IMG/VR virus record: IMGVR_UViG_3300032046_000001
Span: 248,421-312,420 of that record
Direction: 5' to 3' (one strand)
DNA: 64,000 nucleotides
Positions 1 to 6,321 of this stretch are shown one piece after another; the stretch's first letter is position 1, and every line of letters begins with the position of its first letter. A model generated the notes under the pieces. The model was given only the letters and a program-made list of their open reading frames with translations, was not told the DNA's origin and searched no databases. The translations under genes and the position numbers were made by a program.

Positions 1-65
1 CCATTCACCAGAAGCAAGAATGGAATTGAACCATTAATGATATGCCTATCACCATTACTCGATAA

Positions 66-242: not shown

Positions 243-435
243 TTAAAATAATGGAACTATATGAAAATTAATAGGAATACCACATCCGGTACACCCTTCA
301 ATACATGAACTTTTTTCAGGCATCAGATCGAAAAATTCCAATGCCTTTCTCACTTTATGGCACTTCTCAGGGGGTTGGTACGTCAAATGTAATATATTCA
401 TTTAGTACAGTTCCTTCAACATGTAATACATCCAT
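243..435 (-). pseudogene. Frameshifted paralog of the Cys-rich ORF at 1286..1540 (pseudogene, +1 frameshift gene or assembly indel)
   Basis: GGAGGA SD + ATG at 435 gives MDVLHVEGTVLNEYITFDVPTP then TGA; the +1 frame continues EKCHKVRKALEFFDLMPEKSSCIEGCTGCGIPINFHIVPLF, aligning with 1286..1540; length 193 = 3n+1; C5 run at 370-374. Confidence 0.75.
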
Positions 436-450
436 TTTGATTCCTCCTAA

Positions 451-630
451 TTAGAAATCGATTTGTAAACTTATTGTATCTTTTTCAATTCCGTCATCAT
501 CTGTTTCTTCGAACACAATTTCTTCAATTTCAGTTTGACTTGCAAAACCATCATCATAAACCAAAACTTCTACATCACCATGTTTTTTAATAATTTTTTC
601 AATCCTATCAATTAATTCTGATGCTAACAT
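451..630 (-). CDS. Small acidic hypothetical protein (59 aa)
   Basis: Manual translation MLASELIDRIEKIIKKHGDVEVLVYDDG...SLQIDF*, below the ORF-track cutoff, with upstream AGGGG. Confidence 0.7.
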   Translation of the reverse strand: MLASELIDRIEKIIKKHGDVEVLVYDDGFASQTEIEEIVFEETDDDGIEKDTISLQIDF

Positions 631-651: not shown

Positions 652-781
652 TGGTCGCACCGTGGAGATTTGAACTCCAATCCGAATAGCCGATCAAGCT
701 ATCCAATCCTTTGATTAAACTCTGCCCATATACAACTATGGCGGACTTTATTTAATCAGATCCCTATTAGACGACGGTGCT
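652..781 (-). ncRNA. tRNA-like RNA with two large inserted hairpins and encoded 3' CCA
   Basis: AGCACCG/CGGTGCG acceptor, A-CCA end, TGGAG-TTCAAAT-CTCCA T arm, GTCT-AATAG-GGAT D arm; central ~55 extra nt fold into long stems. Confidence 0.65.
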
Positions 782-788
782 AAATAAG

Positions 789-862
789 TTGACGTGAAAG
801 GACTTGAACCTTTGACCTAACGCTTATAAGGCGTTTGCTCTAACCAACTGAGCTACACGTCA
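789..862 (-). tRNA. trnI: tRNA-Ile (anticodon TAT)
   Basis: TGACGTG/CACGTCA acceptor, AACGC-CTTATAA-GCGTT anticodon arm, AAAGG-TTCAAGT-CCTTT T arm. Confidence 0.95.
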
Positions 863-879
863 AACTATGATACTAAAAA

Positions 880-1341
880 TTAACCACCGAATGTTTGTCT
901 GAATATTTCCCTAAATTCATTATATGGAATCATATTTTTTCCTTGTGATCCCTGGACACAAGTCATACCACAAAATTTTGAAATTTTGAGATTTTCAGTT
1001 GAATCTACTTGAAGCGGATTCTTTTCAAACACTGTTTGAGCTAAAGTTATACAAAAATCAGTATCTCTACCAATTCCTGCATTATATGCAGCTTGATATA
1101 TGGCGTATAAATTACCACACGCCTTTTCAAACTGTTCATTTTTTTGCTGTGTCTGTTCCAATTGGTTCTGACCTTGACTTGGAACTGGTGGAGCAACCGG
1201 ATAATTTCTGGTACAACCAAAGAGTAATACCATCAACACAATTGAAAAAAGTTTTGCGTATCCCCTTTTCTTTGAATAATTTAAATTAAAATGGCTGGAG
1301 AAGATCGATATCAATATTGAATCCGCATCCAGTGCATCCAT
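880..1341 (-). CDS. Putative lipoprotein (true start probably downstream of the ORF-track start)
   Basis: Hydrophobic stretch LFSIVLMVLLFGC resembling a lipobox, then Gln/Pro linker and Cys-containing domain. Confidence 0.55.
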   Translation of the reverse strand: MDALDADSILISIFSSHFNLNYSKKRGYAKLFSIVLMVLLFGCTRNYPVAPPVPSQGQNQLEQTQQKNEQFEKACGNLYAIYQAAYNAGIGRDTDFCITLAQTVFEKNPLQVDSTENLKISKFCGMTCVQGSQGKNMIPYNEFREIFRQTFGG

Positions 1342-1540
1342 CCGTGCAGGAGCTATTCACAGGAATGATGCTAAAGAATCCCAACGAGTCTCGTACTCGT
1401 GTACATATCGCAGGTGTAGGAACATTGAAGGTAATATGTTCGCCTGTGTCCATAGTACCTTCAACATGCAACGTTTCTTCAAATATGGAAAGATGTTTTA
1501 CCTTATCTCTTTGAGATGAATTCATTATAATTTCCTCCAT
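1286..1540 (-). CDS. Small Cys-rich hypothetical protein
   Basis: ORF track; C-x3-C-x2-C motif SSCTDGCTGCG; has a paralog at 243..435. Confidence 0.7.
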   Translation of the reverse strand: MEEIIMNSSQRDKVKHLSIFEETLHVEGTMDTGEHITFNVPTPAICTRVRDSLGFFSIIPVNSSCTDGCTGCGFNIDIDLLQPF

Positions 1541-3723: not shown

Positions 3724-4303
3724 AGATCACATTTCCTTTCTTCGTTTTATAACAATATCCACATTCTAAACATGTTTTTTTATTTTTTTCATATAAACAT
3801 TCAAACCCATTTGCTCTTTTATCATTATTTATATATGCGATTCTAAATCCGTCGGGTGGATCAGGCATTGTTATATCAGTAGATAAAAAAATTTGGATAT
3901 TATTTAATTTATTTAGAACTTTTATTTTTTCAAATAAATTTGGAATCACACACGAACGAGTGTATGTCCAAAATTTAATACTTGATAATGATGAACAAAT
4001 TTTAATCCATGAATCAATATAATCTTCACTATAAAAATCTCCAGACGTGTGAATACGTACAATTGATTCACACGTCTTAGAGATTTTATTTATAATCATA
4101 TCAGAAAAATTAGTTTGATCTTTAGAATATTGAAAATTATTTTCGTATGATCGTTCACAAACTTTATATCTTTTCTGATATTTTAAAACATAACACTCTT
4201 TTTCACACCATTTACTTCTCCCAGGACAGCTATAATAACTGGGCATACTGATATTTAATATTTTTCCTAACTTTGTATTTCCCTTACTGATACAAAAATT
4301 CAT
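3695..4303 (-). CDS. Gp88-like (radical-SAM-related) phage protein
   Basis: CPGRSKWCEKECY, VRIHTSGDFYSEDY...W and terminal CLECGYC motifs. Confidence 0.7.
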   Translation of the reverse strand: MNFCISKGNTKLGKILNISMPSYYSCPGRSKWCEKECYVLKYQKRYKVCERSYENNFQYSKDQTNFSDMIINKISKTCESIVRIHTSGDFYSEDYIDSWIKICSSLSSIKFWTYTRSCVIPNLFEKIKVLNKLNNIQIFLSTDITMPDPPDGFRIAYINNDKRANGFECLYEKNKKTCLECGYCYKTKKGNVIFGKHDKRTN

Positions 4304-4792
4304 TTACGATTGTTGATTACTTTTCTCCTGTAGTATTTTAATATACTCTTGGATAATTGTGCGATAAACTAATCCATTTGGAAAGAATGGTAAAATATCA
4401 AATTCAGAATTTATCAAATTAAAATCATATTCTGTTTTGATACCATCATTATTCAATATTTTATCGAGTGCTTTTGCTGTAGCCGAACTACGACTTATAC
4501 CAGCATCGCACTGACACACTATCGTGTTAACATTGTCTTTATTTTCAAAAATAAAATTCAAAATTTGTCTGGCATGATTTTCATTGAATAAAGTCAATTT
4601 ATATTTTTCAATAATATCATCACCAATATCTTCTTCAACATCGCTAAATTTTAATTGTAGAATTCCTTTACAGTTTCTTCGTTTCGGAATTTTTGCGAAT
4701 TCTTCCGAATTTTCTGTAATTGAAATTATAATATATGGAACATCTGCATCAAAGAATCCTATAGTCCACCTGCTTTCAACTACCAGAATCAT
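4304..4792 (-). CDS. Predicted protein-tyrosine/dual-specificity phosphatase
   Basis: CX5R P-loop IVCQCDAGISRSSATA; ISIT N-terminal motif. Confidence 0.8.
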   Translation of the reverse strand: MILVVESRWTIGFFDADVPYIIISITENSEEFAKIPKRRNCKGILQLKFSDVEEDIGDDIIEKYKLTLFNENHARQILNFIFENKDNVNTIVCQCDAGISRSSATAKALDKILNNDGIKTEYDFNLINSEFDILPFFPNGLVYRTIIQEYIKILQEKSNQQS

Positions 4793-5733: not shown

Positions 5734-6321
5734 CTAATCAGGTTTTCTCCTAATTATTGATCGAAAATAAATATCCCTACCATCATAGGTGCATTGTGTT
5801 GATTGTATAACTTCAAATCGTCCCTCATATTCAAATAATCGTTTTATTCTTTGAGGAGTCGTGATATTTTGATGAGGATCATATGTTTCATTAAACATCT
5901 CAGTTGAGATAATTATGTCATTTTTATCAAAATTAGGATCATCAACATCTTCATCAAGAATCATCTGGGATAATGATCTGAAATTAGGACACACTAAATC
6001 AATGACACCATTTGTTTCTATTGCGGTTGAAAGAAGATAGATAAAAAATCCTGTCTGATCTCTTGGAATATGTTCGAAATATCTGTAAATTAAAGCCCCA
6101 TTGAATTTATATTTATAAGTTTTCAAAAATTCAAAAATATCATATTTTACTTCAAGAACACAATGATTAATTTCACCACTTAACCATTTCTTGTGTTGTA
6201 ATTCAGCGTATTCTGGTAAATCAGCCGTGAAATAATTGCGGTCTAAATTAACAATAAATTTACCTTCAATATCAATACCCAAATCTGGTTTACCAGCACC
6301 AATATTAAGAAACGATTCCAT
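5734..6321 (-). CDS. SAM-dependent methyltransferase-like protein
   Basis: FLNIGAG motif I, FEH and L...G.I.LVCP motifs. Confidence 0.65.
   Translation of the reverse strand: MESFLNIGAGKPDLGIDIEGKFIVNLDRNYFTADLPEYAELQHKKWLSGEINHCVLEVKYDIFEFLKTYKYKFNGALIYRYFEHIPRDQTGFFIYLLSTAIETNGVIDLVCPNFRSLSQMILDEDVDDPNFDKNDIIISTEMFNETYDPHQNITTPQRIKRLFEYEGRFEVIQSTQCTYDGRDIYFRSIIRRKPD

What the first reader, a model, noticed from the sequence alone, without database searches (positions are those of the whole stretch)
652..781. 130-nt tRNA-like RNA: tRNA-Glu-like frame with giant central arms and encoded CCA
Seen: the acceptor, D and T arms resemble the local tRNA-Glu (GCAC..TCGTCTAAT...TGGAGTTC.A..CTCCA..GTGC). 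The centre instead has an 8-bp stem TGATTAAA/TTTAATCA capped by a second hairpin (CCATA/TATGG), plus a 9-bp arm TTGGATAGC-TTGATCG-GCTATTCGG. Position 1:72 is mismatched and it is the only one here with a genomic CCA. No canonical anticodon loop is present. Inference: intact pairing argues against decay; it could be a tRNA decoy for anticodon nucleases, synthetases or uncharged-tRNA sensors, an intron-containing tRNA, or a new structured ncRNA.
Basis: partly seen in the sequence, partly recalled or inferred. Interest (0 to 1): 0.7.

Follow-up and report, generated by a model that had tools for sequence, protein, structure and literature searches.

The report
Anticodon-less tRNA-like RNA in phage
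A jumbo phage from sediment carries, inside its tRNA gene cluster, a conserved 130-nt RNA gene that is a remodelled copy of its own tRNA-Glu/Asp with no anticodon, so it is a tRNA look-alike rather than a decoder, and its job is unknown.

Summary
On the minus strand (781..652) lies a 130-nt tRNA-like gene in the tRNA cluster of a 312-kb jumbo phage. ARAGORN and Rfam do not call it as a tRNA.

Walking contigs of close relatives gave four homologues (120-145 nt). All sit right after tRNA-Ile(UAU), and all end in an encoded CCA. Covariation is strong: 16 of 33 pairs show compensatory changes, and 98.8% of cells are paired against about 40% in slid controls. So it is a selected structured RNA, not a decaying pseudogene.

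The homologues change the anatomy. The 9-bp arm is the old anticodon arm of tRNA-Glu/Asp, lengthened and capped by a non-conserved loop. The 47-nt arm is a hairpin inserted in or beside the D loop.

No anticodon is conserved, which rejects the intron-tRNA-Leu(CAA) reading. The 1:72 pair is always weak or mismatched.

The closest analogue is T4 species 1 RNA (rnaC), which has the same setting and a like architecture. A covariance model of rnaC does not recognise this element.

Function is untested. My best guess is a non-decoding tRNA mimic, matured by tRNA enzymes, that acts as a decoy or scaffold.

The parts
652..781 (-). Whole tRNA-like RNA gene (130 nt; 5' end at 781, 3' CCA at 654-652)
   Evidence: Sequence. 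Single-sequence model R1 matches it once in the genome. Four homologues found.
775..781 (-). Acceptor 5' strand AGCACCG (A1 unpaired against G72)
   Evidence: Pairs 2-7 are kept in all 5 homologues. Pair 6:67 covaries C-G / U-A / U-G. Pair 1:72 is AxG, A-U three times, or GxG, and never G-C.
656..662 (-). Acceptor 3' strand CGGTGCG
652..655 (-). Discriminator A73 and encoded CCA
   Evidence: CCA is encoded in all 5 homologues, with discriminator A or G. In this genome only this element and one odd tRNA encode CCA.
769..772 (-). D-stem 5' strand GUCU (invariant)
   Evidence: Identical in tRNA-Glu and in all homologues.
759..768 (-). D-loop-like AAUAGGGAUC, holding the local partner GGAU (760-763) for GUCU
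   Evidence: Present in G000, L123 and L126. L128 and L130 keep only the first three bases, AAU. The local D hairpin is 3.8 kcal/mol better than the long-range pairing in the nearest-neighbour model.
712..758 (-). Arm 1: a 9-bp AU-rich basal helix with a variable distal hairpin, inserted in or beside the D loop
   Evidence: 8 of the 9 basal pairs show compensatory changes. The distal part differs in length and sequence in every homologue. z -2.8.
706..709 (-). Second GGAU, the family-wide (long-range) partner of GUCU
   Evidence: Invariant in all 5. It is the only available partner in L128 and L130, whose own MFE folds pair it with GUCU.
683..705 (-). Arm 2: the anticodon-arm homologue, lengthened to 8-9 bp, with a non-conserved 5-7 nt loop (UUGAUCG here)
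   Evidence: 5 of 9 pairs show compensatory changes. The loops are UUGAUCG, UUGAUCA, UCGCU and CGCGCA. The L130 stem GAUGA/UCAUC equals the anticodon stem of the phage tRNA-Glu/Asp.
663..679 (-). T arm TGGAG-TTCAAAT-CTCCA
   Evidence: 2 of 5 stem pairs are compensatory in L123. The loop is canonical in G000, L123 and L126. It is an 8-nt non-canonical loop in L128 and L130.
788..862 (-). tRNA-Ile(UAU), immediately upstream (about 6-nt spacer); a conserved neighbour
   Evidence: The same neighbour is found in all four relatives.
451..630 (-). ORF59 (phrog_10692, unknown function), starting 21 nt after the CCA
   Evidence: Homologues follow the element in L123 and L126.

Best explanation
It is a gene for a non-decoding, tRNA-derived structured RNA, and five related jumbo phages share it.

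Origin (shown). It arose from the phage's own tRNA-Glu/Asp lineage.
- It keeps the acceptor stem, the GUCU/GGAU D stem, a 4-nt variable loop, the T stem and an encoded N73-CCA.
- The anticodon stem is lengthened from 5 to 7-9 bp and capped by a small loop whose sequence is not conserved.
- A long hairpin (47 nt here) is inserted in or beside the D loop.
- Pair 1:72 is always weak or mismatched.

Maturation and exclusion from translation (inferred). It sits 5-12 nt from flanking tRNAs and is co-oriented with them. It is therefore most likely transcribed with the cluster and cut out by RNase P and the 3' tRNA-trimming enzymes. The encoded CCA then gives a finished tRNA-like end. Lacking an anticodon, and having a poor 1:72 pair, it should stay out of the ribosome.

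Function (guess). It acts through its tRNA-like body and CCA end. It could be a harmless decoy or sponge for a host factor that binds, modifies or cleaves tRNA. Alternatively it could be a tRNA-shaped scaffold that presents its two helices.
For: Real gene under selection:
- Four homologues scored with R1 at 121.8, 109.7, 45.1 and 41.7 bits, E 1e-26 to 4e-8.
- All lie just downstream of tRNA-Ile(UAU), with or without one further tRNA between.
- 98.8% of cells are paired and 16 of 33 pairs have changes on both sides. 0 of 500 shuffles reach this, and slid controls give 32-46% paired.
- Four of the five sequences fold on their own into these helices, so the result does not depend on the alignment. 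In L130 the T-stem region folds differently.

tRNA-Glu/Asp origin:
- The closest frame among about 86 tRNAs is the phage's own tRNA-Glu.
- The family model R3 scores the phage's own tRNA-Glu (45 bits) and tRNA-Asp (41 bits) next after the element.
- The L130 arm 2 stem is the Glu/Asp anticodon stem plus 2 bp.

Not a decoder:
- No ARAGORN or Rfam tRNA call, even at E up to 10.
- The loops of arm 2 differ in every lineage.

tRNA-type processing is plausible:
- Spacers to neighbouring tRNAs are 5-12 nt, and tRNA-Asp follows 6-7 nt after the CCA in L128 and L130.
- No promoter or terminator consensus lies near it.
- T4 makes its species I RNA from one tRNA-cluster precursor (PMC2330249).

tRNA conflict context: the phage encodes an RtcB RNA ligase.
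Against: - No expression data: no RNA run holding it was listed.
- Ends, processing and charging are all inferred.
- The family is narrow. Model R3 found only ordinary-length tRNA hits and one weak 129-nt match in 46 more distant relatives.
- The alignment used for the pair counts was fitted to the model's structure, which favours pairing.
- The GUCU/GGAU stem never varies, so which GGAU it pairs with in this phage is open.
- L128 and L130 have non-canonical 8-nt T loops. A perfect tRNA elbow is therefore not required across the family, which weakens a strict 'tRNA mimic' reading.
- Nothing links it to any particular defence system.
Confidence: 0.62

Rival explanations
1. A decaying pseudo-tRNA: a duplicated tRNA-Glu/Asp that picked up hairpin insertions and has no function.
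For: It is absent from 46 more distant relatives. Related phages carry other, unrelated long tRNA-like genes that are not conserved either. The same cluster holds a tRNA with an 11-nt anticodon loop.
Against: Five homologues keep every helix through 16 compensatory pair changes while the arm sequences diverge. CCA is kept in all of them. GC is far above background. The position in the cluster is fixed.
Confidence: 0.06
2. An intron-containing class II tRNA (ARAGORN: tRNA-Leu(CAA) with a 38-nt intron) that is spliced, perhaps with the phage RtcB as the ligase, and then decodes.
For: ARAGORN gives this reading at 92% or less of its threshold. The putative loop AUCAAAG has U33 and A37, and the discriminator is A73. 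RtcB is in the genome.
Against: The putative loop and anticodon are missing in L128 and L130. The 'mature' anticodon stem would have 3 G-U pairs in 5. There is no bulge-helix-bulge motif, and no splicing endonuclease gene. No ribozyme or group I match in Rfam. The D arm is of class I type.
Confidence: 0.03
3. A distant true homologue of T4 species 1 RNA (rnaC), that is, one old family of phage tRNA-cluster RNAs with a shared function.
For: The setting is the same: inside or at the end of a phage tRNA cluster and co-oriented. The layout is alike: acceptor-like stem, long irregular arm, second hairpin of about 10 bp, then T arm. In rnaC this layout is supported by covariation in 19 of 46 pairs.
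Against: The rnaC model R2 gives the element 7.8 bits, E 6.4, below ordinary tRNAs. The invariant rnaC loops (UUGACG, CGUCAA) are absent. This element is clearly derived from its own phage's tRNA-Glu/Asp, which points to independent origin.
Confidence: 0.1
4. It is aminoacylated, for example by GluRS, which could use the retained D-helix features, and serves a non-ribosomal use or titrates a synthetase.
For: All five homologues keep U11-A24, U13-G22, a 4-nt variable loop with A46, and N73-CCA. By my own recall of the E. coli tRNA-Glu literature, these D-helix features are GluRS determinants.
Against: The anticodon, also a GluRS determinant by my own recall, is gone. Pair 1:72 is not G-C. There are no charging data.
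Confidence: 0.08

Closest known systems
Bacteriophage T4 species 1 RNA (rnaC / RNA C), and with it rnaD
   Same: A stable small RNA gene of about 130-140 nt inside a phage tRNA cluster, co-oriented with the tRNAs. In T4 it is made from the cluster's precursor transcript (PMC2330249). It has an acceptor-like terminal stem, a canonical T arm, one long irregular arm and a second hairpin of about 10 bp. It has no anticodon. Its function is unknown (PMC3014915, PMC9697503). Neither RNA has an Rfam family.
   Different: No detectable sequence or profile homology: R2 gives 7.8 bits. rnaC has no encoded CCA, no GUCU/GGAU D stem and two U-U mismatches in its acceptor stem. It also has invariant, mutually complementary loops. 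The element here keeps a tRNA-Glu-type core and an encoded CCA, and its loops vary.
Canonical phage-encoded tRNAs (Rfam RF00005), specifically this phage's tRNA-Glu(UUC) and tRNA-Asp(GUC)
   Same: It shares the acceptor stem pattern, U8-C9, the GUCU D stem, the T arm sequence and a 4-nt variable loop. It sits in the same operon-like array.
   Different: It has no 7-nt anticodon loop and no conserved anticodon. The anticodon stem is 8-9 bp. A 47-nt hairpin lies in or beside the D loop. Pair 1:72 is mismatched and the CCA is encoded. RF00005 and ARAGORN at default settings do not detect it.
Bacterial Y-RNA-like YrlA (the tRNA-mimicking partner of Rsr/Ro60)
   Same: A non-coding RNA with tRNA-like T and D modules and no decoding role. 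Some jumbo phages carry Ro/TROVE proteins (PMC7824862).
   Different: By my own recall, the ends of YrlA lie in the Ro-binding stem and its 'acceptor' is closed. Here the ends form the acceptor stem with a free CCA. No TROVE gene is in this genome.

Membership tests
Canonical tRNA (RF00005 / ARAGORN) | 7-bp acceptor stem, discriminator, CCA end | tested here: met
   AGCACCG/CGGTGCG, then A73 and an encoded CCA. Pair 1:72 is AxG.
Canonical tRNA (RF00005 / ARAGORN) | 5-bp anticodon stem with a 7-nt loop (U33, purine 37) and an anticodon kept among orthologues | tested here: not met
   The homologous arm has 7-9 bp. Its loops are UUGAUCG, UUGAUCA, UCGCU and CGCGCA.
Canonical tRNA (RF00005 / ARAGORN) | Score at or above the family threshold | tested here: not met
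   No RF00005 match even at E up to 10. ARAGORN at default settings finds nothing, with or without introns.
Canonical tRNA (RF00005 / ARAGORN) | T arm: 5-bp stem with a 7-nt T-psi-C loop | tested here: met
   TGGAG-TTCAAAT-CTCCA here. L128 and L130 instead have 8-nt non-canonical loops.
T4 rnaC (species 1 RNA) | Gene inside or at the end of a phage tRNA cluster, on the same strand | tested here: met
T4 rnaC (species 1 RNA) | Layout: terminal stem / long arm / second hairpin / T arm | tested here: met
   searches compared. This is a resemblance of layout only.
T4 rnaC (species 1 RNA) | Match to a covariance model built from five rnaC sequences | tested here: not met
   R2 gives 7.8 bits, E 6.4, below ordinary tRNAs.
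T4 rnaC (species 1 RNA) | Invariant loops UUGACG and CGUCAA | tested here: not met
   Absent from the element.
Intron-containing tRNA | Bulge-helix-bulge motif or a group I intron core | tested here: not met
   Arm 1 has a 4-nt bulge on the 5' side and a 1-nt bulge on the 3' side, 6 positions apart. No intron or ribozyme family in Rfam.
Intron-containing tRNA | The mature anticodon loop is conserved in homologues | tested here: not met
   AUCAAAG is absent in L128 and L130.
Intron-containing tRNA | A splicing endonuclease is available | tested here: not met
   PF01974 is absent from the phage genome. The host is unknown. RtcB is present.
YrlA / Y RNA | Rsr/Ro60 (TROVE) partner gene | tested here: not met
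   PF05731 is absent.
tmRNA | tRNA-Ala-like domain plus a tag reading frame | tested here: not met
   ARAGORN finds no tmRNA. Rfam tmRNA scores 4.8 bits over 17 nt.
tRNA-Sec / allo-tRNA | 8/5, 9/4, 8/4 or 9/3 acceptor/T stems, a long variable arm and a normal anticodon arm | tested here: not met
   An 8/4 reading is possible, with U8-A119. There is no normal anticodon arm, the long arm is not a variable arm, and RF01852 gives no match.

The most novel reading that the evidence does not exclude
An anticodon-less tRNA-Glu mimic with a CCA end that the phage makes in bulk from its tRNA operon. It would soak up a host factor that attacks or senses tRNA: for example an enzyme that modifies or cuts the CCA end or acceptor stem, or a protein that reads the tRNA-Glu body. 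That would make it an RNA anti-defence decoy. It would also be a second, independently evolved example of what T4 species 1 RNA may be doing.
Probability: 0.2. Interest if true: 0.85.

Novelty: new variant of a known kind. Interest (0 to 1): 0.6.

Why it matters
Phage tRNAs are now seen as tools against host systems that deplete or damage tRNA. Non-decoding tRNA look-alikes in phage tRNA clusters have hardly been studied.

The one classic case, T4 species 1 RNA, still has no known function; two papers read here (2010, 2022) say so.

This work gives a second, independent family with a clear ancestry (tRNA-Glu/Asp) and a covariation-backed structure. It also shows a telling pattern of what is kept and what is free. 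The acceptor end, CCA, D stem and helix lengths are kept. The loops, the distal hairpin and even the T loop are free to change.

That pattern makes the question 'what do such RNAs bind?' directly testable. It also shows that standard tRNA finders miss such genes.

Tried and rejected
**Searches for homologues that found nothing**
- blastn against GenBank phages.
- Exact or degenerate DNA patterns in viral contigs.
- The same in genome contigs.
- The neighbour protein ORF153 in metagenome contigs, which returned only the source contig.
- ORF153 and ORF59 in the 5.8-billion protein set, which returned only themselves.
- Single-sequence model R1 against 43 relatives with RNA polymerase 51-57% identical.

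What worked was a more conserved neighbour, orf162, followed by contig walking.

**Reads**
- Only DNA runs at low depth, with no variants in the element.
- No RNA run was listed.

**The TGGGCAGA motif**
- It is shared with long tRNA-like genes of G005 and G026.
- I rejected it as meaningful because it is absent from the true homologues.

**Other rejected readings**
- Mobile repeat: the arms are unique in the genome.
- Arm 2 loop as anticodon GAU(Ile): the loop is not conserved and position 37 is C.
- A weak 129-nt R3 match in G043: many broken pairs and 27% GC.
- Long tRNA-like genes of relatives (L086, L087, L094, L095): not homologous to this element.

Full report
**Where it lies.** The window is the last 64 kb of a 312,420-bp virus record with direct terminal repeats. 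Runs that hold it are sediment and soil metagenomes. GC is 28.6%, and the phage encodes its own multisubunit RNA polymerase.

The element is on the minus strand, 781..652. It sits in a minus-strand array of tRNA genes and small ORFs. The order is:
- tRNA-Glu
- ORF84 and ORF153
- tRNA-Ile(UAU)
- the element
- ORF59 and ORF52
- tRNA-Trp, Leu, Asp, Lys and His
- an odd tRNA
- tRNA-Ser

**Check of the observation.** ARAGORN, with or without introns, and Rfam, at gathering scores and at E up to 10, do not call it.

It is not a chance look-alike:
- A genome-wide scan for a T arm closed by an acceptor stem returns, apart from AT-rich matches of no further tRNA character, the true tRNAs and this element only.
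- The element and each arm fold better than shuffles.
- GC is 43.8%, in the top 1.2% of windows.
- No ORF of 50 aa or more overlaps it.

Its frame is closest to the phage's own tRNA-Glu; tRNA-Asp ranks third. Against tRNA-Glu, pairs 6:67 and 7:66 changed on both sides and stayed paired, while 1:72 went from G-C to AxG.

An encoded CCA is found only here and in one odd tRNA at genome 248056-248135.

**Finding homologues.** Direct searches failed. The neighbouring gene orf162 has relatives at 76-88% identity. orf162 has a CX5R motif and is called 'predicted protein tyrosine phosphatase' by a source.

Walking their contigs reached the tRNA cluster in four relatives. Each carries a homologue of the element:

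| Locus | Coordinates | R1 score |
|---|---|---|
| L126 | 4498-4642 | 121.8 bits |
| L123 | 4616-4759 | 109.7 bits |
| L128 | 4069-4188 | 45.1 bits |
| L130 | 6094-6213 | 41.7 bits |

All four follow tRNA-Ile(UAU), with or without one more tRNA between. In L128 and L130 they are followed after 6-7 nt by tRNA-Asp.

**Structure and selection.** On the five-sequence alignment:
- 98.8% of cells pair.
- 16 of 33 pairs show changes on both sides.
- No shuffle in 500 reaches this.
- Sliding the partners drops pairing to 32-46%.

By helix, the pairs with compensatory changes are:
- arm 1 base: 8 of 9
- arm 2: 5 of 9
- T stem: 2 of 5
- acceptor stem: 1 of 6
- GUCU/GGAU stem: none; it is invariant

The alignment was fitted to a model, which favours pairing. 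However, four of the five sequences fold on their own into these helices; in L130 the T-stem region folds differently. A plain MAFFT alignment of the three close sequences shows the T-stem double changes.

**Revised anatomy.** L128 and L130 lack the local AGGGAUC. In them GUCU can pair only with the GGAU that follows arm 1.

Read against tRNA-Glu, which runs GUCU, D loop, GGAC, A, GAUGA, anticodon loop, UCAUC, 4-nt variable loop, UGGAG, the family runs:
- GUCU
- AAU, followed by AGGGAUC in three members only
- arm 1
- GGAU
- one base
- arm 2
- RGAU
- UGGAG

The arm 2 stem of L130 is GAUGA/UCAUC plus two pairs. So arm 2 is the anticodon arm, lengthened and with its loop replaced. Arm 1 is a hairpin inserted in or beside the D loop.

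In this phage both pairings of GUCU are possible. The local one scores -38.8 kcal/mol and the long-range one -35.0 kcal/mol.

What varies and what is kept:
- The arm 2 loops differ in each lineage.
- The distal part of arm 1 differs in length and sequence.
- L128 and L130 have 8-nt non-canonical T loops.
- CCA is kept in all five.
- The discriminator is A or G.
- Pair 1:72 is AxG, A-U three times, or GxG.

**What this excludes.** A decoder is excluded, because no anticodon is conserved.

The ARAGORN reading 'tRNA-Leu(CAA) with a 38-nt intron' appears only at 92% or less of the threshold. It needs a 5-bp stem with three G-U pairs. Its loop is absent from L128 and L130. There is also no bulge-helix-bulge motif, no ribozyme match and no splicing endonuclease gene.

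Decay is excluded by the covariation.

**Distribution.** The family model R3 finds the element, then the phage's own tRNA-Glu (45 bits) and tRNA-Asp (41 bits). In 46 more distant relatives it finds only ordinary-length tRNA hits and one unconvincing 129-nt match. The family is therefore confined to a narrow clade and is kin to tRNA-Glu/Asp.

**Closest known.** T4 species 1 RNA (rnaC, 139 nt) lies at the end of the T4 tRNA cluster. It is made from the cluster's precursor transcript (PMC2330249), and its function is unknown (PMC3014915, PMC9697503).

rnaC occurs in 748 phage records. Five diverse copies support, with 19 covarying pairs, a terminal stem, a long arm, a second hairpin of 10 bp and a T arm. 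The layout and setting match.

The rnaC model gives this element only 7.8 bits, E 6.4, and the invariant loops are not shared. I therefore file the element as working like rnaC in layout, not as a member of that family.

**Likely mechanism.**
- Shown: the gene is conserved, structured, tRNA-derived, lacks an anticodon and ends in CCA.
- Inferred: it is co-transcribed with the cluster and released by RNase P and 3' trimming. It is kept from EF-Tu and the ribosome by the weak 1:72 pair and the missing anticodon. This rests on established tRNA biology recalled from my own knowledge.
- Guessed: it acts as a decoy or sponge for a tRNA-binding host factor, or as a scaffold.

Two pieces of context fit a conflict over tRNA. 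The phage encodes RtcB. Its tRNA set (Lys, Glu, Asp, His, Arg-like) overlaps the usual targets of anticodon nucleases, by my own recall. It has no CCA-adding enzyme and no Ro/TROVE protein.

No expression data could be obtained.

Noticed in passing
G000:C1:248056-248135 (-), 286 nt outside the window's low end; homologues at L126:5019-5100 and L128:4942-5019: A second non-canonical tRNA with an encoded CCA. It scores 38 bits with RF00005. Its anticodon arm is either a 5-bp stem with the 11-nt loop UUACGCGCGAA or a 7-bp stem with the loop ACGCGCG. It looks like tRNA-Arg(ACG) with an extra CGCG. Relatives keep the gene but have other odd loops (GUGCGCG; AUCGCUA).
   Followed up: partly
window 1-63 (gene runs to genome 248397): The 'tRNA-Leu(CAA)' called by ARAGORN scores only 12.8 bits with RF00005. 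It has U at position 37 and an unstructured long variable region. Homologues are called in L126 and L128.
   Followed up: no
window 683-705 and the arm 2 loops in L123, L126, L130; the odd tRNA loop at genome 248056-248135: Several loops of these odd RNAs contain self-complementary tetranucleotides: GAUC in G000, L123 and L126, and CGCG in L130 and in the odd tRNA. UCGCU occurs both in the L128 arm 2 loop and in the L128 odd-tRNA loop. Loop-loop pairing or a shared recognition site is possible.
   Followed up: no
window 243-401 (-) and 1286-1540 (-): ORF52 and ORF84 are paralogous small proteins. Both end in a Cys motif (SSC-x-(E/D)-GCTGCG) and both lie within the tRNA array. No Pfam or PHROG match. 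ORF84 homologues are kept in the relatives (L120, L123, L126).
   Followed up: partly
window 4304-4792 (-): orf162 has a CX5R motif (VCQCDAGISRS). It matches phrog_5614, and a source names it 'predicted protein tyrosine phosphatase'. It is the best-conserved gene near the tRNA cluster. A 40%-identical copy lies just downstream of the long tRNA-like gene of relative G005 (L086:10910-11158).
   Followed up: partly
G000:C1:177143-178207 (-): The phage encodes an RtcB RNA ligase (272 bits). It has no CCA-adding enzyme, no TROVE protein and no tRNA splicing endonuclease.
   Followed up: yes
L101:2909-3047 (-) (T4 rnaC) and alignment A3: In T4-type rnaC, the apical UGAC loop of the long arm (UUGACG with its closing pair) is exactly complementary to the CGUCAA loop of the second hairpin. 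Both are invariant in five phages of four genera. A kissing-loop contact is possible. Rfam has no family for rnaC.
   Followed up: partly
L086:11244-11347, L087:3315-3429, L094:6381-6487, L095:2873-3001, L092:4988-5084: More distant relatives carry their own long (93-129 nt) tRNA-like genes, unrelated to this one. One is tRNA-Leu-like with CUA and an 8-bp extra helix. Another is a tRNA-Ile(UAU) with a long variable arm. The one tested, the L095 129-nt gene, was not conserved in the other records.
   Followed up: partly
L092:211-561, L093:4076-4465, L096:7670-8029; L091:14785-14861, L095:12668-12743, L099:1760-1830: Relatives G012, G031 and G008 encode a tmRNA. G012, G031 and G026 encode tRNA(CUA) suppressors, which hints at TAG recoding in those phages. 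This phage has neither, and its ORFs read well under code 11.
   Followed up: no
L111:5556-6137 (genome about 245914-246495); L120:6597-6743; L112:5781-6413; L130:774-1340: Homing-endonuclease genes sit in or beside the tRNA cluster in this phage and its relatives: HNH/NUMOD4 types, and one N-terminus that looks GIY-YIG-like by eye. The stretch between ORF84 and tRNA-Ile or Trp is swapped between relatives (ORF153, a 205-aa beta-barrel-like protein, or an endonuclease). This recalls segB in the T4 tRNA cluster.
   Followed up: no
window 720-728; L087:3368-3376; L086:11311-11319: The 8-mer TGGGCAGA is shared by the long tRNA-like genes of three phages, and with a downstream T loop it occurs nowhere else in 47 records. 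It is absent from the true homologues of the element, so I take it as coincidence or as a relic of a D-arm-like consensus.
   Followed up: yes
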